Virus record (IMG/VR): IMGVR_UViG_3300034012_003212
Span: 62,001 to 126,000 of that record
DNA length: 64,000 nt
Reading direction: 5' to 3' (one strand)
The position numbers and the translations under genes are program-made. The notes below the pieces were generated by a model. That model ran no database searches. It was not told the DNA's origin and saw nothing but the letters and a program-made list of their open reading frames with translations. This document shows, piece by piece, positions 1 through 62,342 of the stretch; within the stretch, counting starts at the first letter, position 1; each line of letters starts with the position of its first letter.

Positions 1-1262
1 TCGCCTTTAACGTTGTGTGGTGCATTGTCAATATAGCAATCAAAAAAGGTGTTATGGGGTGTAGCAATATGACATGATTTTATCTTTGAGAACTCTATGT
101 TGTTGTCCAGCGAGATGTTACAGTAAAACAAATGAGACTCTTTTACTTTACATCCTATGAAGGTGCACTGTTCTATCACAGCACCTTTTATGTAACAGTC
201 GACGAAATCCATATCAGAAAATTTCCACGATCTAAGAAACTTTCCATCTTTTACTTGATACCGATGTAGGTCGTTATCAAGGTTTATCATGCCAGACTTC
301 AACCCGTTTGTATATATCAGATTGAATAGGATGTTTCTTATCTCATTCCAGTATGTTGCCAACAGCTGATCATCGTCCTTGAGATCGACAAAAACTTTGA
401 TCTTTGGATACATCACCTTAAAAACCCTGTGATTTATTATACTATTGACAAACTTTTTATGGTCTATCATCCTCTGTCTCAGGCTATCGACATCCGCTTG
501 ATCGTATGATGGAACCCTCAGGCATTCATATATGGTCAGAGCTGTATAATCAATGAGACTTAGTATATCTTCTATCTTTTCCTCATAATCCCGCCCTCCC
601 ATATACCTCATTTCAAGGTAACCAAATTCAAGCTTTGAGAAATTGAAACCAAAGTACTTGTCACTTGGTACGGTAAAACTCGAACGATTTATCGTCTTTA
701 TGTTATCTGTGAAGGAAAAAAGATTATTCGGAAGGACAAAATCTATAGACTTTGCAAAAACATTGTCCATCCTCTCGGGAAACTTATCGAATACATTATT
801 CTCATCGTAGGATAATATGAGTTTTAATGGATCCAACCCTGATAAATTTATGGTTTTATCAGGGGTCTTAAATGGATCAAAACTTATATTTACGTGTATG
901 CCAGAACGAGATGTGGTTTTTCCATTATCTCGTATGTAATTAAGAACTTTAGCTAGTATTATTTTTGCCTCATAATAAGGAGTAGGACCGGTGACCAATT
1001 CCATCATCGCCGGCCCTCCTGAAAAATCATGCTCTAGCTTATAGTTATAGTAAGAAACCTTCATCTCTGTGTGAGCTCCGGGTATCTTTTTTCCGCTAGG
1101 ATCTGTCTTAAATGCAGCAACGACCTTTTTTTCAAGGATATCTGATAGTTCGCGCGCAACTTTATTGAATCCCTTCTTACAAAAGAATTCAAACTCAAAT
1201 CCTATTATAACAGAATTCAGTATCGCGTTCTTATTTAAAAAATCCCTTGTTTTAAGGTTCAT
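1..1262 (-). CDS. Amidoligase-like enzyme (COOH-NH2 ligase type, Amidoligase_2-like) with a C-terminal beta-repeat-like region; runs off the left edge
   Basis: Absent from the ORF track; translated by hand from ATG at 1262, which overlaps the S1 gene stop: MNLKTRDFLNKNAILNSVIIGFEFEFF...MMELVTGP...SRSGIHVNISF...KYFGFNF...YLEMRYMGG. These match the GxExE / ExV / GxHxN / ExR ligase motifs. Frame stays open to position 1. Confidence 0.7.
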   Translation of the reverse strand, partial: MNLKTRDFLNKNAILNSVIIGFEFEFFCKKGFNKVARELSDILEKKVVAAFKTDPSGKKIPGAHTEMKVSYYNYKLEHDFSGGPAMMELVTGPTPYYEAKIILAKVLNYIRDNGKTTSRSGIHVNISFDPFKTPDKTINLSGLDPLKLILSYDENNVFDKFPERMDNVFAKSIDFVLPNNLFSFTDNIKTINRSSFTVPSDKYFGFNFSKLEFGYLEMRYMGGRDYEEKIEDILSLIDYTALTIYECLRVPSYDQADVDSLRQRMIDHKKFVNSIINHRVFKVMYPKIKVFVDLKDDDQLLATYWNEIRNILFNLIYTNGLKSGMINLDNDLHRYQVKDGKFLRSWKFSDMDFVDCYIKGAVIEQCTFIGCKVKESHLFYCNISLDNNIEFSKIKSCHIATPHNTFFDCYIDNAPHNVKG

Positions 1263-2388
1263 TTTCTGTGTATAATGTTGCTTGGATCAAATTCCGTTTT
1301 TCATTTATACTACTAACTACGATTTTTACCGTGTCCCCTTGCTTTATCCTTTGTTGTGGAGCAGTCACTGATTTGATGGGAACTGTTGTAATTATGTTTC
1401 CGAATTTAATGGTAACATGTGATCCGCGTATAGATTCCACTAGAACATCGACGCACAGATCACTATCGTTAGTTTCTATGATATTTTTTAGGTTCTTCAA
1501 TTGTTCGTACAACGCCTGAACAAAACTTTCATTTTGCGTGAGAACAAAATTCTTAGGCGGTATGACATCCCGGATCCAAACTTCTATTTCAGAACCAGGC
1601 CTTAAAAGCTTTGAAGAAAAATCAGCCGCAGTCTGTTTATTCATATCACCCACGGACAGAAGACCTGTCATTATGCCGTTAAACTCAACAAAAACTCCAG
1701 CATCTATCGATCCCGTCACTATGCCAACGTACAGATTCCTTATATCAAGGTCTGCCACCATCTTAGGCATGATGTGATCTATGTACTTCTTATTGGAAAC
1801 GATGAACGTGTTATTCGCATGGATATACGAATCTACCATCACTTTTATAGTCTTTCCAATGAGTGCTTCAAAATTTGTTATCTTATTAGCACTTGCGAGT
1901 GAACCTGGCAAAAATGCTTCAATGCCATTGATATCAACAAAATATCCCCCTTTGTTCTTCTGAAGGACCTTTGCATCATACACTTTCGTTTGCGCATCAA
2001 TCTGCGAAAAGAAATCATTGAAGATGGATTCACGCTGAGCCTCGGCGAAGCTTCCCATAAGACCACCGTCTGTTGAAATGATCTTTATCGTCTGCTTGCT
2101 TCCGTTTCTCACCGATTCGATAAAACTAGCGGCGTCCAAACCAAGGCCCTTGAGAAAATCTTTCTCTTTATTGATTTTAACACTCACAGCAGGGCAAGAT
2201 TCACCCGTTACTATGACCATGTTATCGTTGGAAGATAGGACGGAGTCTATTTCAAAGATTTGACCGATTGTTACTGATTTGTTCAACTCCCCCTGTGAAT
2301 TGTTAGATATCATCTCCATATAGAGAGAATCATCTATATCATGCGAAAAATCTTGCTGGCTGAAGAGATTCGCGGAAACGTATTTCAT
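1252..2388 (-). CDS. rpsA: Ribosomal protein bS1-like protein (tandem S1 OB-fold domains)
   Basis: NKGGYFVDINGIEAFLPGS resembles bS1 domain 2; YVGIVTGSIDAGVFVEFNGIMTGLLSVGDM resembles domain 3; a further degenerate S1 repeat lies at the C-terminus. Confidence 0.85.
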   Translation of the reverse strand: MKYVSANLFSQQDFSHDIDDSLYMEMISNNSQGELNKSVTIGQIFEIDSVLSSNDNMVIVTGESCPAVSVKINKEKDFLKGLGLDAASFIESVRNGSKQTIKIISTDGGLMGSFAEAQRESIFNDFFSQIDAQTKVYDAKVLQKNKGGYFVDINGIEAFLPGSLASANKITNFEALIGKTIKVMVDSYIHANNTFIVSNKKYIDHIMPKMVADLDIRNLYVGIVTGSIDAGVFVEFNGIMTGLLSVGDMNKQTAADFSSKLLRPGSEIEVWIRDVIPPKNFVLTQNESFVQALYEQLKNLKNIIETNDSDLCVDVLVESIRGSHVTIKFGNIITTVPIKSVTAPQQRIKQGDTVKIVVSSINEKRNLIQATLYTENEP

Positions 2389-2428
2389 TACTACCCCTAA
2401 AAATGCTTGAAAAAAAATTAATTCATAC

Positions 2429-2436
2429 TATATATC
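2429..2436 (-). promoter_or_regulatory. Putative late promoter GATATATA upstream of the bS1-like gene
   Basis: Overlaps the stop of the 887-aa ORF, 40 nt before the S1 ATG. Confidence 0.6.
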
Positions 2437-5098
2437 AAAATGGATCTCTGAAGAATCCACCTTTTTCCTTACCGGCTGAGCACCATTTCCATAAAAAAAG
2501 AAGAAATGCTATGTTATCTAGGCTAAGACGCTCCCAGACAGGAAATTCATCTGAAATCATAGGAAGAGATGCTGCAAGAGATGGGTTCAATTCTGCAAGA
2601 AAATTCATGTGCGTGATCTTCGGGGACAAGATCGAAGCCATAGATTGAACTGACCCCAGAGAAAGGCTGAAACCTTGTATCAAGGATGACACGTTTATCT
2701 TATTAAGATCTATGACAGGAACTTTTATGTTACCAATAAGATTCCTCAGGTCCTCAAGAGAACTATCATATTCATTGTATCTTTCTCTTATCTCATTTAT
2801 CTTCTCATCATACTGCTTTTTTGCTTTACTTATTTCATCGTTGTACTTGTCACTTGCATTTTTTACTAAATTATCGGCCGATTGTTTTGCTAAATCTATC
2901 ATGTCTTGTGCCCTCTTCTTCTCTTGCTCAAATCGGTTAATCTCCTCATTCAGTCTGGTTTCGTTCACTTTTACCAATTCCTCGACGTCTTTGTTGAATT
3001 TATCACGAAGGGCATTTAATCTCACGCTTACCATTTCTCTGGATAAAGGATCCTTTAGATTTTCGAGCTGAGACTTTAGATTTTTTTCCTGGATAGAAAA
3101 TTCATTTTCATATGCAGAAATTGTTTCTTGTGTGCTTTTTCTTAGATTATCTGATGCAGCATCTAAAGATTTTTTCGCAGAATCTTTGATCGTTGCTGCT
3201 TTGTTCTCCGCATCTTTTATCGCGTCAGATGCAGATTTTTTAAGGTATTCAAAGTAAACATACGCAGACTGTTCAAGTTCGGCTTCCTTTTGTTTTGCTT
3301 CAGAAAGGAGAGATCCAACTGATATGCCTACTCCACTTCTCAATGATTTTACTGCTTCATTTATCAATTGCATGAGTGGATTTATGCTTGGAAATGGAAT
3401 GCTTGACAATGACTCATGGCTACTTATGTTTATTGCACCCCGTATGGCGAGAATGAAATAAGGATTGTTTGATTTAAATGGCCCAACAGGAAATGGCAAA
3501 AAATGCTGAGCAAACAAAAAAGGGCATGGTAGTATACCGCACTGACCTATGAATAGTACATATATCCCTGTTTCGCTTGCTATAACGAACAATGGTATCC
3601 ATATGATAGGAAACGGAACCTTTATGAGTGCAACCGGAGTTGGTATAATGAGTCCTATCGGCCAATGAACTGGTATGAGGTTTACTATTGTGGCAAGCGT
3701 TGAAAACTTCTTCCACCATGCATAATCAAATATTGTGGGATTTGTGCTCACATTCTTGAAGTTTACATCTTTTCCAGATTCAACTCCCGGAACTATCTCT
3801 TTCTGAGAACATCCCATCTTTGCAAGTTCCTGATTTACGAGATCATTGACCTTCGATATTACTGCTTCTGCTATCTTTTCCCTCTCCTTTGCAGAATCAT
3901 ACTTCTTCTTTATATCATCGGAATCTGTTTTCCTAAATGCAAGCCTAGTCTTAAAATCGGATGGAAGCTTTTCCTTCTTAGAGAATTTATTAACTCCATA
4001 AGAAAATGATATTTCACCTATAAATTTTAGTGTGTTTTTATATGCGTTATCAAGGTCCAGCTCAGCTTTTTTCGCCAGTTCCAAGGCAGAAGTTTGGTTT
4101 GACTCAACAGTTAAATCAATAGAAGTTATATCATTGGAAAGTTTCGTCGGTATATCCTTAACAGTTCCAAAAAGATCCTTTGATTTATCAAAACCCGCAT
4201 CTAATTTTTCTGCGTCGACGTACAACTGGGAACTGAACTTACCGTATGCTGATGACAGTTGTTTCTGTGCATCCTTTGCGTTTTTACCATACTTGTTAGT
4301 TTTTACCAGATTCTTTAGTGTATCTGATATCTTTGTTTTTTCAGTAGCTGATTGAGCGCTAGAAAGAAGCCTCTGTAGTCTATTGGATTCATCATACCCC
4401 TTCAGGAACGATTCGTAAAATTTATATGATAACTGAGTATAGTAATAATCAAGCTGTAACGATTGTACTTCTTCTTTTGCCTTTTTATATTCTTCTGTCT
4501 GGTCCTGTATCTTTTTTGACAATGAGTTCATCACAGAAAAGCAACCTGAACCGTTTGATGAAAAAAGAGGGACCGTCTGTTCCCTCTCGGCAAAAACCCC
4601 GTCCGATGCAACCTGGCCTTCTTTTAGTGCTCCTGTGCTCAGTGAAGGCTTTAAAGGCGTTGCAGGGATTGGCTGACCATTCTTCTGCTTCCTCCTCTGT
4701 TCTGTCCCAAGAGGATCAAGAACACTATTGATGGATGTTTCTAGACTAGATATGAACTGATCTATGACGGATGGATCAAAATCTCCGACGGATTGTGGCG
4801 TGGAACTTCTATCTATCGAAAATGGAGGTATTACCTGTGCAGTGATCGGGTTCGTGAGTTCTTCGAAGGGTATCTTAACTGGCTCACATGCCGCCTGTTC
4901 TACTTCGCTGTCATTAAATAATTGAGCCGCCTCTGTTTCTTCCGGGGCGCACACAATCTCATCCTCGTATGGAATAAGATCCAGCTCAGAAGGAACCGGG
5001 GACTGATCTGCTTCTGCTAAACGGAGTGCATCAGCGAGCTCCTTCTCTGAAAGAGAAGTTAGATCAATTTCCTTTGGTTCCTGATCATTCACTAACAT
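2435..5098 (-). CDS. Large coiled-coil protein with a central Pro-rich hydrophobic segment; probable virion/baseplate-associated
   Basis: 887-aa ORF with K/E/A-rich heptads flanking WPIGLIIPTPVALIKVPFPIIWIPLFVIA...; lies two genes downstream of gp5. Confidence 0.55.
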   Translation of the reverse strand: MLVNDQEPKEIDLTSLSEKELADALRLAEADQSPVPSELDLIPYEDEIVCAPEETEAAQLFNDSEVEQAACEPVKIPFEELTNPITAQVIPPFSIDRSSTPQSVGDFDPSVIDQFISSLETSINSVLDPLGTEQRRKQKNGQPIPATPLKPSLSTGALKEGQVASDGVFAEREQTVPLFSSNGSGCFSVMNSLSKKIQDQTEEYKKAKEEVQSLQLDYYYTQLSYKFYESFLKGYDESNRLQRLLSSAQSATEKTKISDTLKNLVKTNKYGKNAKDAQKQLSSAYGKFSSQLYVDAEKLDAGFDKSKDLFGTVKDIPTKLSNDITSIDLTVESNQTSALELAKKAELDLDNAYKNTLKFIGEISFSYGVNKFSKKEKLPSDFKTRLAFRKTDSDDIKKKYDSAKEREKIAEAVISKVNDLVNQELAKMGCSQKEIVPGVESGKDVNFKNVSTNPTIFDYAWWKKFSTLATIVNLIPVHWPIGLIIPTPVALIKVPFPIIWIPLFVIASETGIYVLFIGQCGILPCPFLFAQHFLPFPVGPFKSNNPYFILAIRGAINISSHESLSSIPFPSINPLMQLINEAVKSLRSGVGISVGSLLSEAKQKEAELEQSAYVYFEYLKKSASDAIKDAENKAATIKDSAKKSLDAASDNLRKSTQETISAYENEFSIQEKNLKSQLENLKDPLSREMVSVRLNALRDKFNKDVEELVKVNETRLNEEINRFEQEKKRAQDMIDLAKQSADNLVKNASDKYNDEISKAKKQYDEKINEIRERYNEYDSSLEDLRNLIGNIKVPVIDLNKINVSSLIQGFSLSLGSVQSMASILSPKITHMNFLAELNPSLAASLPMISDEFPVWERLSLDNIAFLLFLWKWCSAGKEKGGFFRDPF

Positions 5099-5303
5099 TT
5101 TTCTTTCCTTTTACTGCATCCAGAGATCTAGGAATTTTTAACTGGGATGATAGATCGTTATTCACAGGGGATATAAAAAACTGCTGGCCTGCAACTATCT
5201 TAGTGTTGATATTCGTTGTTTCAGACGACGCTTTTTTTCTGGCGGCAGTTGCAGCCCCATCAATCTTATTAAACCATCCTATTATTGAACTGAAATCTAT
5301 CAT
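5085..5303 (-). CDS. Small hypothetical protein (72 aa, MIDFSSIIGW...)
   Basis: ATG at 5303 overlaps the gp5 stop (ATGA); I prefer this start to 5384 in the ORF track. Confidence 0.55.
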   Translation of the reverse strand: MIDFSSIIGWFNKIDGAATAARKKASSETTNINTKIVAGQQFFISPVNNDLSSQLKIPRSLDAVKGKKNVSE

Positions 5304-6022
5304 GCAGTTGTCTTCACTGTGTTGGATAGAGCAGTTCTCGCCTGTTGCATGATGGCGGCACTTACTCCAGGAGAAGGAGGCCATTTGAGATCAACCGTAA
5401 GCGCGAGTGAATCAAGAGCTGCCATAAGAACCTCTCCTAGTATCACAGAAAACTCTGGAGCCGTTCCAAGTTCCGTGCGGCCTCCGTTAACGTGGACTTT
5501 CGGGGAATTTACTTCCACTTTTGTCACAGCATTAACAACGATGTTGCCTTCTTTTAACTCTATGTTTGATTTACTCTCTTTATGGTCTATCAAAATAGAT
5601 TTATCGGGATTTATTGATATGCTGCTATCGCCCCAAAAAATTTGTATTCCATTTCCAGGCGTGAACCATATTTTCATATTCTGGTCCTCGTCATAGACTA
5701 AAACATGACTATCCTGGTACGTCTCTTTGATGGAGTTCCTCATATCGTCATTGAGGTGGTGAACCCCATGCCACACAGGAGAATGTATATCACCATTCAT
5801 GAAACTAACGCGCACCTTCGTCCCAACTTTTGGAACGGAAAATGCTCCAGCTCCTTTTGACTGCCCTCCTGCAAAAACTGACATTCCATACGGAAATGCC
5901 CATGGGAGTTCTTCGTCTTGTAGATCATCAAAAACTCCATACACCCTGAGCTTGCAACGCCCGAGTATATCAGGGTCATTTGAATCAACTACTATCCCTA
6001 TGAATTCTTGATTAAGATCCAA
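5300..6022 (-). CDS. gp5: Baseplate central spike, gp5/VgrG-like (N-terminal OB fold, no lysozyme domain)
   Basis: FIGIVVDSNDPDILGRCKLRVYGVFD...LPWAFP...VPKVGTKVRVSFMNGDIHSPVW, followed by a beta-rich C-terminus. Confidence 0.85.
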   Translation of the reverse strand: MDLNQEFIGIVVDSNDPDILGRCKLRVYGVFDDLQDEELPWAFPYGMSVFAGGQSKGAGAFSVPKVGTKVRVSFMNGDIHSPVWHGVHHLNDDMRNSIKETYQDSHVLVYDEDQNMKIWFTPGNGIQIFWGDSSISINPDKSILIDHKESKSNIELKEGNIVVNAVTKVEVNSPKVHVNGGRTELGTAPEFSVILGEVLMAALDSLALTVDLKWPPSPGVSAAIMQQARTALSNTVKTTA

Positions 6023-7886
6023 AGTCTTCCTCCACCTTAGGCTTATTAAATTTCACATCACTGGATATCCTTGTGTCCTCGAACGCAGGCCGAAGTTCGA
6101 TTGAAGTCAATGAATCTTCGGATAATACGGTAGGGAGGCCGAAATTCACAAACTTTTCCACATCGTTGATATTAACTACACTTGGAACCTGGAAGTCCAC
6201 TCTGTCTATAATTTCTTCTGATGTTGTAGATGAATTGAATTCAACACTTCCTATGCCAAACTCAACGCTAGGGGTCTTCAATTCAACCATCTCCGTTATA
6301 TCCAGATCAACCGTTGGTGCTGTGAATTTTACTTCGGATAATTGATCATCAACTTTAGGGACATCGAAAGATATGTTTGATATATCAGTGGACACTGTCG
6401 GTAGTTCGAACGAGATGTCGTTGATTTCGGTGGCAACAGTAGGAGCTACGTATTCTATTGCTGCCAGCGACTCATCAACTTTAGGTTTGTCGAACGTGAC
6501 ATCTCCTATTGAACTATCAACTTTAGGCTTCTGTAGATTAACGTCGGATGATATAGTTGTCTCAAAAGAAGGTCTTACTAGATTCACATTTGAGATCTCT
6601 GTCTCGACCTTTGGCCTCATAAATTCTACTTGATTAGGCATATCTTCATCTAATTTTGGTTCTTCAAATTCAATTTGTGGTTCAATATTAACATCTTGCG
6701 TTGGCCTCTCAAATTCGATCGAGTTTCTTATGTCAGTTGTTACGCTCGGACGGCCAAATTCGATTAATCTTGGTGTTTCTCCTGTGATTCCGGCTGAGCT
6801 CTCAATGGCCTGCATTATCGTTCTTGCTTGTTCTGCTCTTGAAGCTGACATGTCCATGGAATTTAGTTCAGCTTGACGGATTCTTTCACGCTCTTCTCTT
6901 GGAAGAGCTTCAACCGTGTCAGCTTTAGTGAATTCCATATTATTCAGAAAATAGTCACGTATGTTGTTGTTGCTAGATGCAATTACATTCTCATAATTAT
7001 TTTCATACTCTCTTATGAACGGTGCTAAAAAACTCCTATAATTCGTCACATCACGAAAATCATTGAATGATGCACCGCTTCCCCCTTGTTTTATGATGAG
7101 ATCTCGTTTCATCTCACCGAGCATGTAGTTTAGAAGTTTATATGAGTTTGCCTCTTGTACCCTTCCAACTTTTATGTTAAATGATGCTCCGGCAGTTGTG
7201 TATTCATCCCCCTTTAGGGTTTTAGCAGGGACAGATGAACTAAAGTCGAATTCGCAATCAAAACACCTGAACGCAATGGCAGAAACGTGGTTCAACCAAT
7301 CAGGACGAAGAGAATTCCTGCCCTGTTGAACAAATGTCTTCAAATATCTCGCCTCTCCTGCTATCACCGTCATATTGAACCTCCGTTTATTCAACGGAAG
7401 AAGTTCACGAAAGTATAACCTGTCCCATGAAGCCTTTCTGTATAAATCAGCAAGAGCCGTCATACGAAGGTCCACCGTCTCGTAACAATCCAAAGTTAAT
7501 GTAACATCATCAATCTGGGTCTTTGAGTCGTTTGACGCAGAAGGATATCCCCATTTCCAAAGACCCTCGAGTCCTGATATCTGTTTAAAAAACCAAGGAA
7601 AATCATCAGAAACTCTGCTCAGAAGCCACCTGAACTCCTTGAGCGCTTCCGCCTTTCCTTGTTCTCCGGTCCTACGGAGATAACTTATAGCACTTTCATC
7701 CCTGTCCTCTGATAAGAGAAGACCTTGTGTGACTTCATTATCATTGTTGAGTGGCTCAAAATCAAATAGCACCCTAAATGTGATAAAAGACGGATCATTG
7801 TACCTTAACTTATCGTCAGGTGTTGTTCCAGCTGACTCGAAGACGAACTTCCTCTCGAGTCTACCGACGTGCATGATTCCGCTCAT
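6012..7886 (-). CDS. Probable baseplate/tail structural protein with a C-terminal 14-16 aa repeat array
   Basis: 624-aa ORF in the baseplate cluster; globular N-terminus (NDPSFITFRVLFDF...DCYETVDLRMTALADLYRKA) followed by repeats. Confidence 0.55.
   Translation of the reverse strand: MSGIMHVGRLERKFVFESAGTTPDDKLRYNDPSFITFRVLFDFEPLNNDNEVTQGLLLSEDRDESAISYLRRTGEQGKAEALKEFRWLLSRVSDDFPWFFKQISGLEGLWKWGYPSASNDSKTQIDDVTLTLDCYETVDLRMTALADLYRKASWDRLYFRELLPLNKRRFNMTVIAGEARYLKTFVQQGRNSLRPDWLNHVSAIAFRCFDCEFDFSSSVPAKTLKGDEYTTAGASFNIKVGRVQEANSYKLLNYMLGEMKRDLIIKQGGSGASFNDFRDVTNYRSFLAPFIREYENNYENVIASSNNNIRDYFLNNMEFTKADTVEALPREERERIRQAELNSMDMSASRAEQARTIMQAIESSAGITGETPRLIEFGRPSVTTDIRNSIEFERPTQDVNIEPQIEFEEPKLDEDMPNQVEFMRPKVETEISNVNLVRPSFETTISSDVNLQKPKVDSSIGDVTFDKPKVDESLAAIEYVAPTVATEINDISFELPTVSTDISNISFDVPKVDDQLSEVKFTAPTVDLDITEMVELKTPSVEFGIGSVEFNSSTTSEEIIDRVDFQVPSVVNINDVEKFVNFGLPTVLSEDSLTSIELRPAFEDTRISSDVKFNKPKVEEDFGS
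6015..6764 (-). repeat. About 17 degenerate protein repeats, consensus (V/I)xFxxPxVxxxI
   Basis: IEFGRPSVTTDIRNS / IEFERPTQDVNIEPQ / VEFMRPKVETEISN / VTFDKPKVDESLAA / ISFELPTVSTDISN / VKFNKPKVEEDFGS. Confidence 0.85.
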
Positions 7887-9121
7887 TCGCCTTGAAATTT
7901 TGTTATAAGCGCAGCATCTGGTGTGTTCTCTGTGTTTGGTATCGATAGATCAGAACGCTGCCATTCTTCTCTCCAGACAAAATCATCATGACCAAGTTCA
8001 AGGAACCTCTCATGGATCTTCTTGTCATAGTATGATGCTATATATCTCACGGCCCGTTGTATCTCTGCCCTTCTTGGTTCCTGTGTGTTGTTTCCGCCTG
8101 CATTCATGTACTGTATGTAACACAGTTTAGGAACGTGTATCATCCTCGTGCCAAGGAAACTCCTCACGACAAGTTCATAATCATCTGCTATGTGCAATCG
8201 AGGATTATGGCCTCCTATTTCGTGGTAGAACTTTCGCTCCCACGCGCGTATGTGATTGGGGCACGCAATGATATGCCTCATCGTTTTTGGATTGATGGGC
8301 ACAGTCTCACATGTGTACTGGGCGTTATTATAGTTCGTGGTGTAGTGTTTGCCGTAACCGTATCCCCAAAAATCCCCGTAATTAACACATCCTCCGGTTT
8401 CAAAAACCTCAGACGCGTCCGTGTATAGGAATTTTCCTTCCGGATATTCGCCGAAACCGCGTTTAACGTGATCGAGTGCCCAAGGAGTCAGAGCATCATC
8501 ATGATCGAGTTCGACGAGGTATTTTCCTGTACAAAGACCCGCTGCATTTCGCTTCACTTCTCCTATGATTCCGCTGGGTTTGTTTGATTTAAAAACACGT
8601 ATACGGTGGTCCTGGCTCGCAAGCTGCAGGAGCATATCAAAGGTCTTTCCTCCGTCATTTGAATCATCGTACAAGACCCATTCCCAATTTGAGTGCCACT
8701 GATTCTTGAGAGATGTGAAAACGCGATCGATTCGATTCCCGGTTCTGTACGTGGGGGTAAAACAGCTTATCAACGGATCTTCGTCATTCTTCTCCTGGTT
8801 TAAAATAGAGTCAATAAAACAGAAATACGCAGAATCTCCTATGTTGCCATCATCGGATTTTATATTTTCCACGTGTATCCATTTTCTCCTGATGCTATAT
8901 GGCGCGTTGTACAACTGTGCGAATAAAGACACATCAGGCCCGGTTGTTATGTACACCATAGGATTTATAGTCCTGATGATGAAATTGAGATCATCGGTAT
9001 GCGAAAAAAAGTGACACTCAAAATCATGGGATTCTGAAATCCACTGTACATTTGTTGAGTGTATCTCCGTCTTTACTTTACAATCCTTAGAGAATATCGC
9101 TACTACTGGTGTGATTGGCAT
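7883..9121 (-). CDS. Glycosyltransferase family 2 with an N-terminal extension
   Basis: ISCFTPTY...NWEWVLYDDS...GEVKRNAAGLCTGKYLVELDHDD...HIADDYEL (GT-A fold with DxD motif). Confidence 0.9.
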   Translation of the reverse strand: MPITPVVAIFSKDCKVKTEIHSTNVQWISESHDFECHFFSHTDDLNFIIRTINPMVYITTGPDVSLFAQLYNAPYSIRRKWIHVENIKSDDGNIGDSAYFCFIDSILNQEKNDEDPLISCFTPTYRTGNRIDRVFTSLKNQWHSNWEWVLYDDSNDGGKTFDMLLQLASQDHRIRVFKSNKPSGIIGEVKRNAAGLCTGKYLVELDHDDALTPWALDHVKRGFGEYPEGKFLYTDASEVFETGGCVNYGDFWGYGYGKHYTTNYNNAQYTCETVPINPKTMRHIIACPNHIRAWERKFYHEIGGHNPRLHIADDYELVVRSFLGTRMIHVPKLCYIQYMNAGGNNTQEPRRAEIQRAVRYIASYYDKKIHERFLELGHDDFVWREEWQRSDLSIPNTENTPDAALITKFQGE

Positions 9122-10560: not shown

Positions 10561-11175
10561 TTAACCTAGTAAACGATTTTTAATCAATTTAGAAACCAAT
10601 TCTCCCTTGCTGATCGGCTGATTTTCATTCGTCACACATTTACCTATGTTCGGAGCGAATATCACCCTGCCGCCCTTTACTATAAACTGCTTATCCCCGA
10701 AATCTGCAACAGTAGGAGGAAGGCCACTTCCATTCTGCTGTAATTCTGATTCCTGTTTATCGAATGCTCTGTTGAATTTCTGTATGGAAGATTCCGACTT
10801 TCTATCATCGACATCCTTGAATGAAATCCTGAAATCTTGTACCTTTTCATCCCTTGAGTCATCATTCTTTCTATTAAGAATGTTTCTAGAAAATGAAACT
10901 AGTTGAGGTATAACGAGTGAATTGTTCATCTCGATGGAAAAAGGATTTGATATGCCATTTGCTTTACATATTTCATCCTGATGATCATCGCTTCCATACA
11001 CTCTAAGAGACACAAGATCTGGTCTTGATTGTTCCCCGTCCTTTACGAGTGTGTATGAAAGAGGCTGAACACCGTCCAATGTATCAAGGGTCTTTTCGGT
11101 TAAAAGCACCTTCTCTACATTACCGTACTCGTCTATCTTTTTAGGTTTCTTTGAAAGAATTATTGACTCAAACAT
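10561..11175 (-). CDS. gp53: Baseplate wedge gp53-like (LysM-type) protein
   Basis: YTLVKDGEQSRPDLVSLRVYGSDDHQDEICKANGISNPF. Confidence 0.75.
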   Translation of the reverse strand: MFESIILSKKPKKIDEYGNVEKVLLTEKTLDTLDGVQPLSYTLVKDGEQSRPDLVSLRVYGSDDHQDEICKANGISNPFSIEMNNSLVIPQLVSFSRNILNRKNDDSRDEKVQDFRISFKDVDDRKSESSIQKFNRAFDKQESELQQNGSGLPPTVADFGDKQFIVKGGRVIFAPNIGKCVTNENQPISKGELVSKLIKNRLLG

Positions 11176-11779
11176 CTGATTGTAATTTTTTTAAGATCCA
11201 AAATGAATCAATGACATCATCCACCGGTTTTACCACCTTATCTTTCTTGAGAACTTCATCAATCGATGATGAAATCCTAACATGAACGTCGTTTTTCTTG
11301 ACAGAGAGATCATCCAATTCAATGAACTTTTCAAGCAATTGCACTTTATTGAATTTTCCGCTCCCAGCAAAGGCCTTTATAGTCATAGGAGAATAGAAAT
11401 ACATGTTGTTTAATTCAATGGATTTATTTTCCACTAACATGTACCGTAAAAGGAACTGATATGAAACAAGTTCTAAAAGAGAGTTTCCTTTACTTCCAAA
11501 TGAATGTCCTTCAAATGCAACATGTGTAACACCTCTTTTAGAGATCTCTAGGTAAATATTAGAACACAGATGTTTTGCATCATCCATCTTCATCCGTTCA
11601 TTTGAGCAGTAGTTCTTGTGTGATTCCCTTTTTGGGAGGACCCATTGTTGGAAATTTTTATTTCCAAGCCAGAAGTATTTAGAAGCCTCACGGCCGAAAT
11701 GCAGCCACGAGTATTCTCCATCTGAAAATATGCAAACAGACGCTGAATTTATGCTAAAGTCTATGCCGGCTAAAACCAT
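11168..11779 (-). CDS. RuvC-like Holliday junction resolvase
   Basis: LAGIDFSINS...VAFEGHSFGSKG...PMTIKAFAGSGKFNK...DDVIDSFWI (RNase H fold acidic tetrad). Confidence 0.8.
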   Translation of the reverse strand: MVLAGIDFSINSASVCIFSDGEYSWLHFGREASKYFWLGNKNFQQWVLPKRESHKNYCSNERMKMDDAKHLCSNIYLEISKRGVTHVAFEGHSFGSKGNSLLELVSYQFLLRYMLVENKSIELNNMYFYSPMTIKAFAGSGKFNKVQLLEKFIELDDLSVKKNDVHVRISSSIDEVLKKDKVVKPVDDVIDSFWILKKLQSDV

Positions 11780-26317: not shown

Positions 26318-27388
26318 TTATGCTAAAAACATCCTTTGTTCCTTTGACCTTCTTTCAGAAAGACCCGACAGAGTTCTACCCTGTGACTTAACCCAACGAG
26401 GGAACTCTGATGCAGCCCCTGCATAGTCCTTCGAATTGATCTTTTTCAGAAGAGTGCTTTTTTTGAAATTGCCAAACCCGACGTTGTACGCAAAAGAAAC
26501 GAGAGCATCCCATTGATTCTGTGTAACGGGGACTTTGACGACTGATCTCATCTTCTGTTCAAATTTTCCTACGACCCTTCTCATCATGGAATCTGCCTGT
26601 TCCCTTGTTATCGGTCCCATGTTTGGATTTTTAACACCTACACCGAATCCAATCGAATATCCATTTCCATCTTTGTATGCATTCTGCTTGAAACCCTCGT
26701 ATGCCTGTATGGCCTGGATTCCGCGTTCAGAGATTCGAATGTTTGATGGATTTATCGTCCCGGACGGTTGGTATGGTTCAAATTCGGTGGTGTCTGCATC
26801 ACCTGAACCATCATCTTTTGTTCCAGCCAAAGCAATAGAGCTTGTGGCCGCAGATGAGGTTATTCCGATTGATGCTAATTTCGGTAGGTCTTTTAGCGGA
26901 ACCTTTGTGACGATATTTACGCCCGATGAAGGGTCTTTGAAATACCCGAAGAAGTCTTTCTGCTGGACGTCGATGTTCTCGCCGTTCTTTGCGTCCTTTG
27001 ATAGAGCAATCTTGGCGTCTATGATCTTTTTTATCCTCGGATAAACAGAAACGACCATATCATCACTGACTGCGTCTGAATCAACGTCAGTCAATATGTT
27101 TACGTGTTTTATGGCAGTTGAAAGATCTGCCTTTGCTGTTGTTATATCGAGCCCGGAATCCTTCAAAAAGGACTCATGTTTGTCGATGAGTTTCAGGAGC
27201 TTGTCCCTATCGAACATCACCTGAACTGAAAATTTTTTCCGCTGAGATTGTTTTTCGCCTGATAGATATCTAAGTAATACCTGAAGATCAGAATAATTGA
27301 ACCCGTCGTTAAGGCAGGAAAGTATCCTAACAAACGCTACATTATAAGGGATGATATCCTCTATGTTCTCTAAAAGAAAATATTTCAT
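26318..27388 (-). CDS. GH24 phage lysozyme domain with a ~210-aa N-terminal extension
   Basis: ISERGIQAIQAYEGFKQNAYKD...SIGFG...TQNQWDALVSFAYNVG...STLLKKIN...EFPRWV...GLSERRSKE. Confidence 0.9.
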   Translation of the reverse strand: MKYFLLENIEDIIPYNVAFVRILSCLNDGFNYSDLQVLLRYLSGEKQSQRKKFSVQVMFDRDKLLKLIDKHESFLKDSGLDITTAKADLSTAIKHVNILTDVDSDAVSDDMVVSVYPRIKKIIDAKIALSKDAKNGENIDVQQKDFFGYFKDPSSGVNIVTKVPLKDLPKLASIGITSSAATSSIALAGTKDDGSGDADTTEFEPYQPSGTINPSNIRISERGIQAIQAYEGFKQNAYKDGNGYSIGFGVGVKNPNMGPITREQADSMMRRVVGKFEQKMRSVVKVPVTQNQWDALVSFAYNVGFGNFKKSTLLKKINSKDYAGAASEFPRWVKSQGRTLSGLSERRSKEQRMFLA

Positions 27389-27392
27389 GCCC

Positions 27393-27400
27393 TATATATC
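27393..27400 (-). promoter_or_regulatory. Putative late promoter GATATATA
   Basis: Ends 4 nt before the lysozyme ATG (near-leaderless). Confidence 0.6.
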
Positions 27401-31824: not shown

Positions 31825-31940
31825 GGTGTAGTTTTTTTTATATATCTGCAATACATGTAATTTAATTACTTATGGTGACTAATATGAGCATGGTCTAATA
31901 GATATCTCATATATCCAACCGTTTACGCATACTCATATTA

Positions 31941-41612: not shown

Positions 41613-43226
41613 TTATATATTTTCTTTAGCAACAAAAGAATTTACTTCCTGAATAATACCTTCAAAAACTATTATCGGAGACGAATCATATGATACATTA
41701 TGACACACATCGTAAAAAAGGGTGTCCACTGGATAGTCATACTGATTGACGGTTCCTGATTCTGCTGTATCATACATTGAAGAAGAAACTATGCCCACCT
41801 TTAATCCATGCTGAACAGAAGAACTACCTGTATATGCTATGATATCAGATGAATTGGAAATGACGCGCGAGTTTCGAATCAATAGAGATGGGTTTGACAT
41901 GCCATAACTAGAAGGCACTCCACTATCATCTGCTGATATGATGTCTATTACTGTTTGATTCTCATTTTCTCCTGTAAAATGACATGCTTCGAACCTCACA
42001 CTGGATAATTCATCCATCTCAATAGTTCCTCTTATGCATGATCTTGTAAAAATTGCAAGAGATGAGTAGCAAATGATATTATTTACCGTTGAGTCTGTTA
42101 GCATGAGCCTAGATACGTCAGTCAGTCCTGTTGTTATCATTTCAATATCATGAATCTTTCCTCCGTTGACTTGGAGTGACGAATCTGATAATGATATGGT
42201 TCCATCATTGAATGAAAAATCATTTCCACATAATTCGATTTTAGATCCATCTGTGAAAGATATGTGAGATGCACCCCCATCAAAACTCACAGTAACATGC
42301 CCTATGAAGGTCATTCTGAGTTGTGCGGAAGCTGCACAATCAATGGAGTCTTCTAACACGTAATCACCTGGATAGATTATCATTGAAGACGCTCCAGTTA
42401 TATCTATGTAATCAAATGCATGCTGTAGGTTACTAGCAAGATTTGATATGTTAGGAAATCCAGGAGAAACGAAAACAGTAGATGCCGGATACGAAAAACT
42501 TTCTCTGAATTGCTCTGCCCCAAACGGAAGCCAAAAAGGAGCATCCACTGGGCTCCTGTCATTAAAGTCGACGCTGGAAAAATAGAATTTTCCTTCATAT
42601 TTAACAACATTCCACCTAGAATACGATGAATCTACGTCCCATGAACCCCTGTACCTAAAGGATCCGGGTTTTGTGGGTCCCGTGTCTCCGGTTTGACCAG
42701 TAGGACCTGTTGGCCCCGTGGGCCCAACGTCAGGAAATGAAGGAAACTGGGAGAGCGTGTTGAATCCTTTATCCCCTTCATATCTTATAAATGATATGTA
42801 TACTCTATTTTTATCATAAAGTCCTTTTAGTCCATTGGTGAGTATGAGGACCCCGGAATCTGAATCAAAAAATACATCGCCCTGAGAATATGGCATTTCT
42901 ATATAATTGCCTTGATTCGTGCGATTGAAGAATTGTACTCTATACGATGGATCAAAACCGGAATCAAAACAGACAACATCGTACACTTCACTTGATGTGA
43001 ATGCGTATTTATCCGAAGACATTCTTCTCATCTCAACATACTGCAACTTTTTCAGTATTGCCTTTCCCTTTGAGTTGCGGAAAAAACCATCCTGATCAAA
43101 CGATGGTGCATTCGATGGAATATCAGAACCGTCCCTCCATATTTGCGAGTTGAAAACGGACTCACTATTAGGGCTAACAATAGCGTATTTAGAATACAGT
43201 ATGTCTATCTTTTCTTGATCTGTCAT
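41613..43226 (-). CDS. Fibre/spike paralog with the shared N-terminal anchor domain
   Basis: MTDQEKIDILYSKY...DSDSGVL...RYEG; GPTGP linker; YRGSWD..YSRWNVVKYEG small carbohydrate-binding-like module; beta-helix-like C-terminus. Confidence 0.7.
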   Translation of the reverse strand: MTDQEKIDILYSKYAIVSPNSESVFNSQIWRDGSDIPSNAPSFDQDGFFRNSKGKAILKKLQYVEMRRMSSDKYAFTSSEVYDVVCFDSGFDPSYRVQFFNRTNQGNYIEMPYSQGDVFFDSDSGVLILTNGLKGLYDKNRVYISFIRYEGDKGFNTLSQFPSFPDVGPTGPTGPTGQTGDTGPTKPGSFRYRGSWDVDSSYSRWNVVKYEGKFYFSSVDFNDRSPVDAPFWLPFGAEQFRESFSYPASTVFVSPGFPNISNLASNLQHAFDYIDITGASSMIIYPGDYVLEDSIDCAASAQLRMTFIGHVTVSFDGGASHISFTDGSKIELCGNDFSFNDGTISLSDSSLQVNGGKIHDIEMITTGLTDVSRLMLTDSTVNNIICYSSLAIFTRSCIRGTIEMDELSSVRFEACHFTGENENQTVIDIISADDSGVPSSYGMSNPSLLIRNSRVISNSSDIIAYTGSSSVQHGLKVGIVSSSMYDTAESGTVNQYDYPVDTLFYDVCHNVSYDSSPIIVFEGIIQEVNSFVAKENI

Positions 43227-43228
43227 TT

Positions 43229-53557: not shown

Positions 53558-54023
53558 ATGTACTAAAAAAATATTTTAGGTAAGGAAAAGACCATATAAT
53601 AAAACAAGCGAATATGACCCTTCTCACAAACCACCAGAACCCTATCTCGTACATTAACGGTGAAAATTTGATGAGATATGAATTCGTTTCTTCGATTCTT
53701 TCGACGGTTGGCATTATGATTTCCGATAGGTTATTGTCAACCAACCAGTTTATCATAGGTTTTATCCTATCGAGAACAAGAGTTTTTTGCACGTCATTGG
53801 GGAGGCTTTGTTCTTCAAATGGAACGGACCTCACTGTGTACATTCTACCTACCCAGTCATGGCGTAAATTGAACTCAAGCCATTTTTCATTTCCCCTGTT
53901 TTTCCGTATGAATAGCCAGATGTAAACGTAGAAATAAATGTCCTTAAGTCCAGTTTTTAGCAAAAAAATATTTATCATTCTCTGAATTCTCCGAGTATAG
54001 TCAGATGCTCTTCCATTCATCAT
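53544..54023 (-). CDS. Hypothetical protein with a C-terminal transmembrane segment
   Basis: 159-aa ORF; IGFWWFVRRVIFACFIIWSF. Confidence 0.55.
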   Translation of the reverse strand: MMNGRASDYTRRIQRMINIFLLKTGLKDIYFYVYIWLFIRKNRGNEKWLEFNLRHDWVGRMYTVRSVPFEEQSLPNDVQKTLVLDRIKPMINWLVDNNLSEIIMPTVERIEETNSYLIKFSPLMYEIGFWWFVRRVIFACFIIWSFPYLKYFFSTYVSK

Positions 54024-54669
54024 ATAAATGCTGCAATCTATTTTTCAAGATTCGTCTTCCCTTATGAATGTATATCTTGCACTTGGGCATGTCTAGTTTA
54101 TACTTTTCTGCAAGATCCTTGTAACTCATCTTGTGGACTTCCCGATCCCAAATTATCCCCTTGTATCTATCATCAAGCTCTCGTATTTCTTTTATTACTG
54201 ATCGAATGAGGTATCTGAGGGCATCGTTTTTTATCTGTTTATCCGCATCGGGATTATCAATGTACTGATCCTTGACAGAAGATTCTATAAACATCTTAGC
54301 CTGAGACTGAGACGAATCCGAAGATCCTGCGGTGTGTGTTAATTCACCGTTGTTCATGGAAACTTCTTTGTATTTTTTCTTTTTACTCAGCTTGATAAGA
54401 GCTTCATTTTTTGCTATGGTATAAGACCATGTAGAAAATTTGAAGTATTCATTATAGCTGTCAATATTTATAAATATCTTCAGTAATGCATCACTGACGC
54501 AATCTTCCACGTCCATGTGTGAAAGTTCATTCGCTGCATTATAGTATTTATTTATAAAGAACTGAAAACGAGGCTTGAGCTCATTGTACAAAATGATGTA
54601 ATTCTCATGCGTCCTCGTGTTGAAATACTGCATGCCCAATTGCTGCAGATCTCTACCTTCTCTTCTCAT
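54001..54669 (-). CDS. ECF-type sigma-70 family RNA polymerase sigma factor
   Basis: Region 2 DVEDCVSDALLKIF...KFSTWSYTIAKN; region 4 MSYKDLAEKYKL...KIYIHKGRRILK. Likely start MRREG at 54669. Confidence 0.85.
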   Translation of the reverse strand: MRREGRDLQQLGMQYFNTRTHENYIILYNELKPRFQFFINKYYNAANELSHMDVEDCVSDALLKIFINIDSYNEYFKFSTWSYTIAKNEALIKLSKKKKYKEVSMNNGELTHTAGSSDSSQSQAKMFIESSVKDQYIDNPDADKQIKNDALRYLIRSVIKEIRELDDRYKGIIWDREVHKMSYKDLAEKYKLDMPKCKIYIHKGRRILKNRLQHLYDEWKSI

Positions 54670-62334: not shown

Positions 62335-62342
62335 TATATATC
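62335..62342 (-). promoter_or_regulatory. Putative late promoter GATATATA upstream of the sheath gene
   Basis: About 30 nt upstream of the ATG at 62304. Confidence 0.7.

What the first reader, a model, noticed from the sequence alone, without database searches (positions are those of the whole stretch)
1252..2436. Phage bS1 homolog under an apparent late promoter
Seen: a shortened bS1 with domain-2-like and domain-3-like repeats plus a divergent N-terminus, preceded by GATATATA and embedded in the baseplate cluster. Established: bS1 recruits A/U-rich leaders, and S1 homologs have been reported in huge phages. Inference: it may replace host S1 to bias ribosomes toward the SD-less, A-rich late mRNAs seen throughout this window.
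Basis: partly seen in the sequence, partly recalled or inferred. Interest (0 to 1): 0.65.

Follow-up and report, generated by a model that had tools for sequence, protein, structure and literature searches.

The report
Jumbo-phage ribosomal protein S1 homolog
A 260-kb freshwater jumbo phage carries a shortened, four-domain copy of bacterial ribosomal protein S1, made with its late (virion) genes; this fits a known idea, still untested, that huge phages re-tune host ribosomes towards their own messages.

Summary
Window 1252-2388 (- strand) encodes a 378-aa protein derived from ribosomal protein bS1. It has an N-terminal helix, a very divergent OB domain in the place of D1, a domain that matches only bS1 domain 2, and two generic RNA-binding S1 domains. 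The modelled helix+D1+D2 module superposes on ribosome-bound E. coli bS1 (Z 14.1).

GATATATA at 2429-2436 is a real recurrent element: 38 genome copies against about 10 expected, 23 of them within 80 nt upstream of a start codon (p about 1e-20). It precedes the sheath, portal, prohead-protease and endolysin-like genes and a bS21 homolog. An ATATATA core lies upstream of the S1 gene in four diverged relatives. Motif-linked leaders are A-rich and carry Shine-Dalgarno words only at the random rate.

The gene sits between baseplate-hub and wedge genes and overlaps a downstream amidoligase/pentapeptide-repeat gene. The phage's nearest relatives are the Lak/'Mahaphage' huge phages of Bacteroidota, which carry S1 homologs. 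S1 in huge phages and its link to SD-poor genomes were published in 2020, so this is a new, well-resolved member of a known kind. Ribosome binding and biased translation remain inference: no RNA data exist and the complex prediction gave no answer.

The parts
2429..2436 (-). GATATATA promoter-like octamer, 40 nt upstream of the S1 ATG. It overlaps the TGA stop (2435-2437) of the upstream 887-aa gene.
   Evidence: over-represented and concentrated upstream of starts. The extended consensus is T-rich at -4..-1, GATATATA, G/C, then an A-rich run, with no -35-like element. The ATATATA core is conserved upstream of S1 in relatives L002/L003, L004, L022 and L023.
2389..2428 (-). 40-nt stretch between the motif and the ATG. 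It is T-rich, holds a 2-codon mini-ORF ATG-AAT-TAA (2418-2426), and has an SD-like AGGGG (2394-2398) at -10..-6.
   Evidence: Read directly from the sequence. It is unlike most motif-linked leaders, which are A-rich and lack SD words.
1252..2388 (-). CDS of the 378-aa bS1 homolog (P0001), acidic (pI 5.1).
   Evidence: It is the only S1-domain gene found in the 260,658-bp record.
2296..2331 (-). Residues 20-31: a predicted helix equivalent in position to the uS2-binding N-terminal helix of bS1. It is preceded by a 19-residue extension (the model shows residues 1-16 disordered).
   Evidence: The model has low confidence here. VIA-align places model residues 25-204 on E. coli bS1 3-174 in the 30S pre-initiation complex: Z 14.1, rmsd 3.9 A, 167 aligned. 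There is no significant sequence match.
2044..2280 (-). Residues 37-115: a divergent OB domain in the position of bS1 D1.
   Evidence: The sub-profile matches D1 only at E 0.003, 6.5 bits.
1789..1992 (-). Residues 133-200: a bona fide bS1 domain 2 (motif GGYFV..G..AFLPGSLA..NKI). It is the most conserved part of the family and the only basic domain (pI 9.35).
   Evidence: The sub-profile hits only D2 of bacterial bS1: E 5e-11 and 5e-12 for the two shown. 10 of the 18 invariant columns of the family lie here. pI.
1531..1743 (-). Residues 216-286: a generic RNA-binding-type S1 domain in the D3 position.
   Evidence: F233 is invariant. The canonical His is Ser in this protein but His in the family consensus.
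1264..1470 (-). Residues 307-375: a fourth S1/OB domain of generic D3/D4/D5 type, followed by a short acidic tail (..YTENEP).
1..1262 (-). Downstream gene (447 aa; it runs 81 nt beyond the window start). Its ATG lies 11 nt inside the S1 reading frame. It has an amidoligase (glutamine-synthetase-like) N-domain and a pentapeptide-repeat C-domain.
   Evidence: The adjacency to S1 is conserved in L003, L004, L015, L022 and L023. The family also occurs without S1.
2435..5098 (-). Upstream 887-aa coiled-coil protein with hydrophobic stretches. Reading it as a tape-measure-like protein is a guess from its make-up and its position beside the hub gene.
   Evidence: Conserved upstream of S1 in L003 and L023.
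5300..6022 (-). gp5-like baseplate hub OB-domain protein (context).
   Evidence: PF04717 E 1.6e-10; phrog_430 E 3.9e-18.
54001..54669 (-). Phage-encoded sigma-70-family factor. It is a candidate reader of the GATATATA element; the link is not tested.
   Evidence: PF04542 E 3.8e-10; phrog_1740 E 1.1e-9.

Best explanation
This is a phage-encoded, four-domain paralog of ribosomal protein bS1, descended from the bS1 of Bacteroidota-type hosts. It is made together with the virion genes from a phage-specific, -10-only type promoter (T-rich, GATATATA, G/C, A-rich), possibly read by the phage's own sigma factor.

Proposed mechanism:
1. The N-terminal helix, the D1-position OB and the strictly conserved D2 dock it on the 30S platform (uS2 side) in place of, or beside, host bS1.
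2. The two C-terminal S1 domains hold single-stranded, A-rich, SD-less leaders of late phage mRNAs.
3. This raises initiation on those mRNAs when structural proteins are needed in bulk.

Shown here: bS1 ancestry, the domain map, the conserved motif and its link with late genes, the A-rich and SD-poor leaders, co-occurrence with a phage bS21, and conservation across a large family of jumbo phages.

Inferred: promoter activity and timing, ribosome docking, RNA preference, and any bias against host mRNAs.
For: Protein:
- Homology to bS1.
- D2-specific match, and D2 is the most conserved part of the family.
- Model residues 25-204 superpose on ribosome-bound bS1 3-174 with Z 14.1.
- Whole-chain Foldseek best hit is bS1, E 1.7e-19.
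- More than 100 relatives of about 378-430 aa sit on contigs of up to 343 kb.

Lineage and host:
- The portal's and S1's nearest relatives are the same Lak/LR7565xx huge phages. PMC7162821 predicts these infect Bacteroidetes.
- 14 of 111 family members, plus Lak-A2, keep the F[DN]W N-terminal element. The same element is seen in the 10 of 30 Bacteroidota-phylum bS1 closest to the Flavobacteriales query.
- The phage bS21's only pattern-level genome matches are an Amniculibacterium and a Rikenellaceae MAG.

Promoter-like motif:
- Motif statistics.
- It lies upstream of the sheath, portal, prohead-protease and endolysin-like genes and of bS21.
- The core is conserved upstream of S1 in relatives.
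- A phage sigma factor is present.

Leaders: A-rich and without SD enrichment.

Precedents:
- PMC7162821: rpS1 in huge phages correlates with missing SD.
- PMC9723584: phage bS21 of freshwater Bacteroidetes phages is transcribed with structural genes.
- PMC7797042: Bacteroidetes ribosomes ignore SD, and the authors suspect bS1-mRNA contacts matter more there.
Against: - There is no direct evidence of ribosome or RNA binding.
- The N-terminus and the D1-position domain have no significant sequence similarity to bS1.
- The Bacteroidia-type F[DN]W element is lost in this protein's own 378-aa subfamily.
- In this protein two canonical RNA-contact positions of the third domain are changed (His to Ser, aromatic to Ala). 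The fourth domain looks degenerate at the matching positions, by eye from the sequence only.
- It scores 71 bits against the rpsA equivalog model, where true Bacteroidota bS1 score 546-574.
- Several motif-linked genes have only 4-9 nt between the motif and the ATG. Their mRNAs would be nearly leaderless, a class that does not need S1 in E. coli (my knowledge).
- The S1 gene's own leader is not A-rich.
- No RNA run holds this DNA, so timing is unproven.
Confidence: 0.5

Rival explanations
1. It acts off the ribosome as a free single-strand RNA chaperone or shield. It coats late phage mRNAs, protecting them from host RNases or from translation-directed defences, or it assists a phage RNA enzyme, without docking on the 30S subunit.
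For: S1 domains are generic RNA binders and occur in many non-ribosomal proteins (PMC6375957). The N-terminus and D1 are too diverged to show uS2 docking. PMC7162821 itself allows a role 'on or off the ribosome'.
Against: The bS1-specific D2 is not an RNA-binding-type domain in E. coli (my knowledge). Yet it is the most strongly conserved part of the family. The N-helix/D1/D2 module keeps the geometry of ribosome-bound bS1.
Confidence: 0.2
2. It works as a pair with the overlapping downstream amidoligase/pentapeptide-repeat protein. Either S1 brings the ligase to the ribosome or to mRNA, or S1 is itself the ligase's substrate. The unit would then be a ribosome-modifying module, not a plain S1 substitute.
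For: The two reading frames overlap by 11 nt. Adjacency is kept in relatives down to 27-35% S1 identity: L003, L004, L015, L022 and L023. At least a dozen pairs of the two families' members list identical longest-contig lengths. The ligase domain keeps invariant Glu and Arg residues and a near-invariant His. It has a glutamine-synthetase/YbdK-like fold at pLDDT 92.9. In L004 an ATP-grasp (R2K-like) ligase follows.
Against: The amidoligase/pentapeptide family also occurs with no S1 match within the 5 kb held on each side, behind its own TAATATATA motif (L024, L025). No copy lies within 6 kb of S1 in Lak-A2 or LR745206. The S1 C-terminus is not conserved across the family, so there is no obvious shared modification site. 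Adjacency may only reflect insertion of S1 into an existing late transcription unit.
Confidence: 0.1
3. It is packaged in the virion and delivered with the DNA. It would then act on host ribosomes at the very start of the next infection, not late in the current one.
For: It lies inside the baseplate/tail module and shares the promoter-like motif of virion genes. That position is kept in relatives.
Against: No packaging signal or virion proteome is available. The phage bS21 precedent was read as late-acting, not packaged (PMC9723584). This reading does not exclude the main one.
Confidence: 0.1
4. It is a structural OB-fold tail or baseplate protein that only looks like S1 and has no RNA role.
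For: Its genomic position among baseplate genes. OB folds are common in hub proteins.
Against: Collinear sequence homology to bS1 over four domains and their linker helices, at profile E 3e-44. The D2-specific match. No PHROG structural family match. Baseplate proteins appear in the viral fold search only at E about 1e-2.
Confidence: 0.03

Closest known systems
Bacterial ribosomal protein bS1 (rpsA), e.g. E. coli bS1 (PDB 9guq, 6h4n, 6bu8) and the 595-659-aa bS1 of Bacteroidota
   Same: N-terminal helix, D1-position OB, a D2 with the GG..AFLPGSL motif, then RNA-binding-type S1 domains joined by long linker helices. Acidic overall. The helix+D1+D2 module superposes on ribosome-bound bS1.
   Different: Only four domains, where E. 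coli bS1 has six (my knowledge) and the two Bacteroidota bS1 read here are 595 and 659 aa. D1 and the N-terminus are unrecognisable by sequence. A 19-residue N-terminal extension is present. It lacks the F[DN]W element of Bacteroidia bS1. It scores 71 bits against about 550-570 for real bS1 on TIGR00717. It is encoded by a virus and flanked by baseplate genes.
S1 homologs of huge phages (Lak phages, LR756500-LR756504, LR745206; Al-Shayeb et al. 2020, PMC7162821) and same-length entries already labelled '30S ribosomal protein S1' in uncultured phages (BFVD A0A6J5NIG6, A0A8D9CG03)
   Same: Homologous at 27-34% identity. Similar length of about 366-395 aa. Same phage lineage by portal. The genomes are poor in SD. 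The best viral fold matches have E 1e-24 to 1e-28.
   Different: This 378-aa subfamily sits in 260-290-kb freshwater phages. It has lost the F[DN]W N-terminal element, and it has a fourth S1 domain where Lak-A2 has an acidic tail. Its fixed position behind the tape-measure-like gene, with its own ATATATA element and an overlapping amidoligase gene, was not found described in the papers I searched.
Phage-encoded bS21 of freshwater Bacteroidetes phages (Chen et al. 2022, PMC9723584)
   Same: A small-subunit initiation-related ribosomal protein gene placed among structural genes. It is proposed to enter host ribosomes during late replication. Same habitat. This genome also has a bS21 gene with the same upstream motif.
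   Different: A different protein with a different ribosomal site. For bS21 there are metatranscriptomes; for this S1 there are none. Here the bS21 gene does not lie beside the portal, protease or S1 genes, unlike the conserved context given in that paper's abstract.
T4-type late promoters (TATAAATA, -10-only, read by the phage sigma gp55; my knowledge)
   Same: An A/T octamer with no -35 element, concentrated just upstream of virion genes. The phage carries its own sigma-70-family factor.
   Different: The sequence differs (GATATATA). No transcription start is mapped. The sigma-promoter link is untested. Spacing to the ATG is often only 4-9 nt.

Membership tests
bS1 (ribosomal protein S1, rpsA) | Tandem array of S1/OB domains joined by helical linkers, collinear with bS1 | tested here: met
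   Four OB domains in the AF2 model. Profile collinear with M. smegmatis bS1, 34-370 against 29-364, and E 3e-44 to E. coli bS1. Foldseek best hit 9gut_B, E 1.7e-19, over 375 columns.
bS1 (ribosomal protein S1, rpsA) | bS1-specific domain 2 | tested here: met
   The sub-profile of residues 133-200 matches only D2 (about 107-173) of bacterial bS1, E 5e-11 and 5e-12 for the two shown, and no other domain significantly.
bS1 (ribosomal protein S1, rpsA) | N-terminal helix plus D1 that dock on uS2 | tested here: inconclusive
   The fold and geometry match ribosome-bound bS1 residues 3-174: Z 14.1, rmsd 3.9 A. The sequence signal is absent or faint: N-terminus E 7, D1 E 0.003. The helix has low model confidence. 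The complex prediction gave no verdict and counts neither way.
bS1 (ribosomal protein S1, rpsA) | Score at the level of curated equivalog models (TIGR00717, NF005208) | tested here: not met
   71.4 bits against a cut-off of 577, and 61.7 against 368. Two genuine Bacteroidota bS1 score 546-574 on TIGR00717.
bS1 (ribosomal protein S1, rpsA) | RNA-contact residues in the mRNA-binding domains (D3-D5 type) | tested here: inconclusive
   F233 is invariant. The conserved His is Ser here but His in the family consensus. One aromatic position is Ala. The fourth domain has poor matches at these positions, by eye only.
bS1 (ribosomal protein S1, rpsA) | Physical, reversible association with the 30S subunit and a role in initiation | not testable with these tools
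   Needs biochemistry or cryo-EM; the host is not cultured or identified.
Phage-encoded S1 homologs of huge phages (PMC7162821) | Encoded on a phage genome with hallmark virion genes, homologous to the Lak/LR7565xx S1 ORFs | tested here: met
   IMG/VR record of 260,658 bp. Sheath, portal, protease and baseplate genes are present. tblastn to Lak and LR7565xx gives E 2e-24 to 8e-13. The portal's nearest relatives are the same phages.
Phage-encoded S1 homologs of huge phages (PMC7162821) | Genome with few recognisable Shine-Dalgarno sequences | tested here: met
   27% of 331 called genes have a core SD 4-mer at -18..-4, against 11% in random windows. The figure is 13% for motif-linked genes. The region -16..-7 is 50-62% A at most positions. 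Gene calls are my own crude longest-ATG ORFs.
-10-only late promoter (T4 gp55 type) | Conserved A/T octamer, no -35 element, enriched just upstream of late genes | tested here: met
   Not present within 120 nt upstream of the PolB parts, the DnaB-like helicase or the sigma gene.
-10-only late promoter (T4 gp55 type) | Mapped transcription start and late timing; dependence on a phage sigma | not testable with these tools
   No RNA run holds this DNA. A phage sigma gene exists, but its specificity is unknown.

The most novel reading that the evidence does not exclude
The S1 homolog and the overlapping amidoligase/pentapeptide-repeat enzyme form a conserved two-gene late module. In it, the S1-like protein is the ribosome- or mRNA-targeting subunit, or the substrate, of a peptide or amino-acid ligase. 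Some of these phages add an R2K-type ATP-grasp ligase. This would be a phage system that covalently re-tools the host's initiation platform, not one that merely supplies a spare S1.
Probability: 0.1. Interest if true: 0.75.

Novelty: new member of a known kind. Interest (0 to 1): 0.45.

Why it matters
Bacteroidota ribosomes ignore Shine-Dalgarno sequences, and how they choose start sites is still open; bS1 is a prime suspect (PMC7797042). A compact, conserved phage bS1 would give a natural minimal S1 with which to test what bS1 contributes to SD-independent initiation. It keeps D2, has a re-modelled docking end and only two RNA-binding domains, and is co-encoded with a phage bS21. Both genes sit behind one promoter-like motif, and the phage's late leaders are short and A-rich. 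It would also test whether phages bias ribosomes during late gene expression. The idea is already in the literature, so the value here is a well-delimited candidate and a defined set of test leaders, not a new concept.

Tried and rejected
- Complex prediction of residues 1-215 with Flavobacterium johnsoniae uS2: no verdict (score 0.02). It counts neither for nor against binding.
- RNA evidence: the look-up of sequencing runs found 20 DNA holders, lake or freshwater metagenomes plus one crustacean metagenome, in 16 studies, but no RNA run. Read laying was not used, because DNA contigs cannot show timing or transcription starts.
- Megablast of window 1-8000 against GenBank phages: no match.
- The PDB entry named 'Ribosomal protein S1 homologue' (28jw/9tvu) is from a Chlamydomonas chlororibosome, not a phage protein.
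- From memory, the first residues (..SANLFSQQDF) seemed to resemble the E. coli bS1 N-terminal helix. The N-terminal sub-profile gives E 7, and the structural alignment puts the equivalent helix at residues 20-31 instead, so I dropped this.
- A conserved C-terminal acceptor site for the neighbouring ligase: the C-termini are conserved only within the close subfamily.
- Obligatory S1-ligase coupling: rejected as a rule, because the ligase family occurs without S1 in L024 and L025 and is not near S1 in Lak-A2 or LR745206.
- The sigma-70 consensus promoter and terminator scan of 1-6200 gave fewer promoter-like sites than shuffles, and no terminator between the upstream gene and S1.
- The large representative protein search was not run, because the family scans and the word search already placed the protein.
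Full report
**What is there.** Window 1252-2388 on the - strand is an ATG-initiated ORF of 378 aa. Evidence that it derives from bS1:
- It carries Pfam S1 domains (PF00575, E 7.9e-14).
- Its best solved relative is E. coli bS1, with query 140-271 on chain 111-244, i.e. D2-D3.
- It matches several NCBIfam rpsA models, far below their equivalog cut-offs: 71 bits against 577.

The window is bases 62001-126000 of a 260,658-bp IMG/VR virus record, estimated 88% complete. This is the only S1-domain gene found in the record. Near-identical DNA occurs in lake and freshwater metagenomes of 16 studies. No RNA run holds it.

**Anatomy of the protein.** I aligned 67 relatives and ran AlphaFold2 on the alignment (mean pLDDT 82.7). 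The model shows:
- a disordered N-terminus (1-16);
- a low-confidence helix (20-31);
- four OB/S1 domains at about 37-115, 133-200, 216-286 and 307-375, joined by long helices.

The whole chain's best Foldseek match is bS1 resolved on the 30S subunit (9gut_B, E 1.7e-19). The family profile hits E. coli bS1 at E 3e-44. It is collinear with M. smegmatis bS1 (34-370 against 29-364).

I cut the family alignment into domains and searched bacterial bS1 sequences with each piece:
- Domain 133-200 matches only bS1 domain 2 (E 5e-11 and 5e-12 for the two shown).
- Domains 216-286 and 307-375 match the generic RNA-binding type (D3/D4/D5).
- Domain 37-115 matches D1 only faintly (E 0.003).
- The N-terminus matches nothing.

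D2 is also the most conserved part of the family: 10 of the 18 invariant columns lie there.

VIA-align puts model residues 25-204 on residues 3-174 of ribosome-bound E. coli bS1 in the 30S pre-initiation complex (Z 14.1, rmsd 3.9 A, 167 aligned). Similar results come from 9gup, 8peg and the mycobacterial ribosome. So the helix at 20-31, the first OB and D2 together look like the ribosome-docking module of bS1, preceded by a 19-residue extension.

In this particular protein, the third domain has lost two canonical RNA-contact positions: the conserved His is Ser and one aromatic is Ala. The protein is acidic (pI 5.1), and D2 is its only basic domain.

It missed the fourth domain and the D1-position domain.

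**The upstream motif.** GATATATA lies at 2429-2436 (-), 40 nt before the ATG, overlapping the TGA stop of the upstream 887-aa gene.
- In the window it occurs 10 times against 3.3 +/- 1.8 in dinucleotide shuffles. Nine of the ten are on the coding strand.
- In the genome it occurs 38 times against about 10 expected. 23 copies lie within 80 nt upstream of a called start on the same strand, a zone covering 5% of strand positions (binomial p 1.3e-20).
- The extended consensus is T-rich at -4..-1, then GATATATA, G/C, then an A-rich run. There is no -35-like element.
- It precedes the tail sheath, the prohead protease, an endolysin-like gene and the portal.
- It is absent within 120 nt upstream of the two DNA polymerase B parts, the DnaB-like helicase and the sigma gene.
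- An ATATATA core lies upstream of the S1 gene in relatives whose S1 is 31-49% identical: L002/L003 GATATATA, L004 TAATATATA after a hairpin, L022 and L023.
- The phage encodes a sigma-70-family factor at window 54001-54669.

By analogy with T4 late promoters (my knowledge), a late, -10-only promoter is a reasonable reading. No transcript data exist to prove activity or timing.

**Leaders.** I made crude gene calls (331 longest-ATG ORFs covering 92% of the genome).
- The region -16..-7 is 50-62% A at most positions, against 32% on the coding strand overall.
- A core SD 4-mer occurs at -18..-4 in 27% of genes, against 11% in random windows.
- For the 23 motif-linked genes the figures are 53% A and 13% SD, i.e. 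the random rate. Many leaders read gaaaaaaa...
- Several have only 4-9 nt between the motif and the ATG and would be nearly leaderless.
- The S1 gene's own leader is an exception: it is T-rich, has a two-codon mini-ORF, and has AGGGG at -10..-6.

**Context.** On the - strand the order is:
- gp25-like wedge (10561-11175);
- unknown protein;
- family-2 glycosyltransferase (7883-9121);
- unknown protein;
- gp5-like hub (5300-6022);
- an 887-aa coiled-coil protein with hydrophobic stretches (2435-5098);
- S1;
- a 447-aa protein whose ATG lies 11 nt inside the S1 frame;
- a gp6-like wedge protein.

'Embedded in the baseplate cluster' is correct.

The 447-aa neighbour has an amidoligase N-domain (Amidoligase_2 in 17 of 51 family members) with a glutamine-synthetase/YbdK-like fold at pLDDT 92.9. 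It keeps invariant Glu and Arg residues and a near-invariant His. Its C-terminus is a pentapeptide repeat.

The S1-ligase adjacency is kept in five diverged relatives. In one of them an ATP-grasp ligase follows. However, the ligase family also occurs with no S1 match in the 5 kb held on each side, behind its own TAATATATA motif. It is also not near S1 in Lak-A2 or LR745206. So the coupling may only reflect S1 having been inserted into an existing late unit.

**Lineage and host.** S1's best phage matches are the Lak phages of Prevotella and the 462-735-kb LR7565xx genomes. The portal's nearest relatives are the same phages. Al-Shayeb et al. place these in the Mahaphage clade and predict Bacteroidetes hosts for the Lak phages and for the genomes above 634 kb (PMC7162821).

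The same genome encodes a bS21 homolog (genome 152304-152522, PF01165 E 1.7e-18) with GATATATA 32 nt upstream. Its only pattern-level matches among species genomes are an Amniculibacterium and a Rikenellaceae MAG, both Bacteroidota.

Reading bS1 from those two genomes and from 30 genomes of the phylum showed an F[DN]W element about 35-40 residues before D1. It occurs in the ten sequences closest to the Flavobacteriales query. Fourteen of 111 phage-family proteins, plus Lak-A2, have F[DN]W in the first 90 residues. None has it in the 32,209 residues beyond. This points to a Bacteroidia-type bS1 as the ancestor. The 378-aa subfamily of this window has lost the element.

**What is known already.**
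- Ribosomal protein S1 in huge phages, and the observation that such phages rarely have recognisable SD sequences, were published in 2020. The authors added the caveat that 'true' rpS1 is hard to confirm (PMC7162821).
- Viral S1 had been set aside as ambiguous in 2019 (PMC6375957).
- Same-length viral proteins are already labelled '30S ribosomal protein S1' in public tables.
- Phage bS21 in freshwater Bacteroidetes phages lies among structural genes and is transcribed with them (PMC9723584).
- Bacteroidetes ribosomes sequester the anti-SD, and the authors suspect that bS1-mRNA contacts matter more there (PMC7797042).
- I found no paper describing the S1-amidoligase pairing.

**Verdict.** The one complex prediction gave no answer. 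I rate it a new, well-resolved member of a known kind. My confidence is 0.5 for the ribosome-acting mechanism, with an off-ribosome RNA chaperone as the main rival. Interest is 0.45.

Noticed in passing
outside the window: genome G000:C1:152304-152522 (+), locus L018 1471-1689: A 72-aa ribosomal protein bS21 homolog (PF01165 E 1.7e-18) in the same phage, with GATATATA 32 nt upstream of its ATG. The phage therefore carries two small-subunit initiation-related ribosomal protein genes behind the same motif. bS21 is also present in LR745206, but not in Lak-A2 or LR756500.
   Followed up: partly
window 1-1262 (-), continuing to genome 61919: A 447-aa fusion of an amidoligase (glutamine-synthetase/YbdK-like fold, Amidoligase_2) with a pentapeptide-repeat domain. 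It overlaps the S1 stop by 11 nt and belongs to a large phage-only family of at least 129 proteins. Function unknown.
   Followed up: partly
window 54001-54669 (-): A phage-encoded sigma-70-family factor (Sigma70_r2 E 3.8e-10; phrog_1740). It is a candidate reader of the GATATATA element.
   Followed up: partly
genome-wide; in the window at 27393-27400, 31839-31846, 62335-62342 and others: Many GATATATA sites lie only 4-9 nt from the ATG (for example the endolysin-like gene 26318-27388). If the motif is a -10 element, these mRNAs would be leaderless or nearly so.
   Followed up: partly
outside the window: genome 141265-142650 (+) and 250003-251193 (-): The family-B DNA polymerase is split into two ORFs about 108 kb apart on opposite strands. 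PF00136 positions 16-145 fall in one and 146-382 in the other.
   Followed up: no
window 37094-41608 (-), with 41613-46866: A 1504-aa collagen-like tail-fibre protein with many repeated matches to tail-fibre PHROGs. It is followed by three paralogous fibre-like genes of about 540-610 aa.
   Followed up: no
window 7883-9121 (-) and 11168-11779 (-): A family-2 glycosyltransferase (412 aa) and a RuvC-like resolvase homolog sit inside the baseplate module. The glycosyltransferase position is kept in relatives L002 and L003.
   Followed up: no
window 2418-2426 (-): A two-codon mini-ORF (ATG AAT TAA) starts 2 nt after the GATATATA motif, in the S1 leader. It may be chance.
   Followed up: no
loci L027, L026, L028-L037 (Bacteroidota bS1 genes); phage proteins P0054-P0106; L016 (Lak-A2): An N-terminal F[DN]W element about 35-40 residues before D1 is shared by Bacteroidia-type bS1 and by the more distant phage S1 subfamilies, including Lak-A2. 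It is absent from the other Bacteroidota-phylum bS1 sampled and from this window's subfamily. Its role is unknown.
   Followed up: partly
outside the window: genome 22678-22750, 193327-193400, 194172-194246: Three tRNA genes: Lys-TTT, Met-CAT and Arg-CCT.
   Followed up: no
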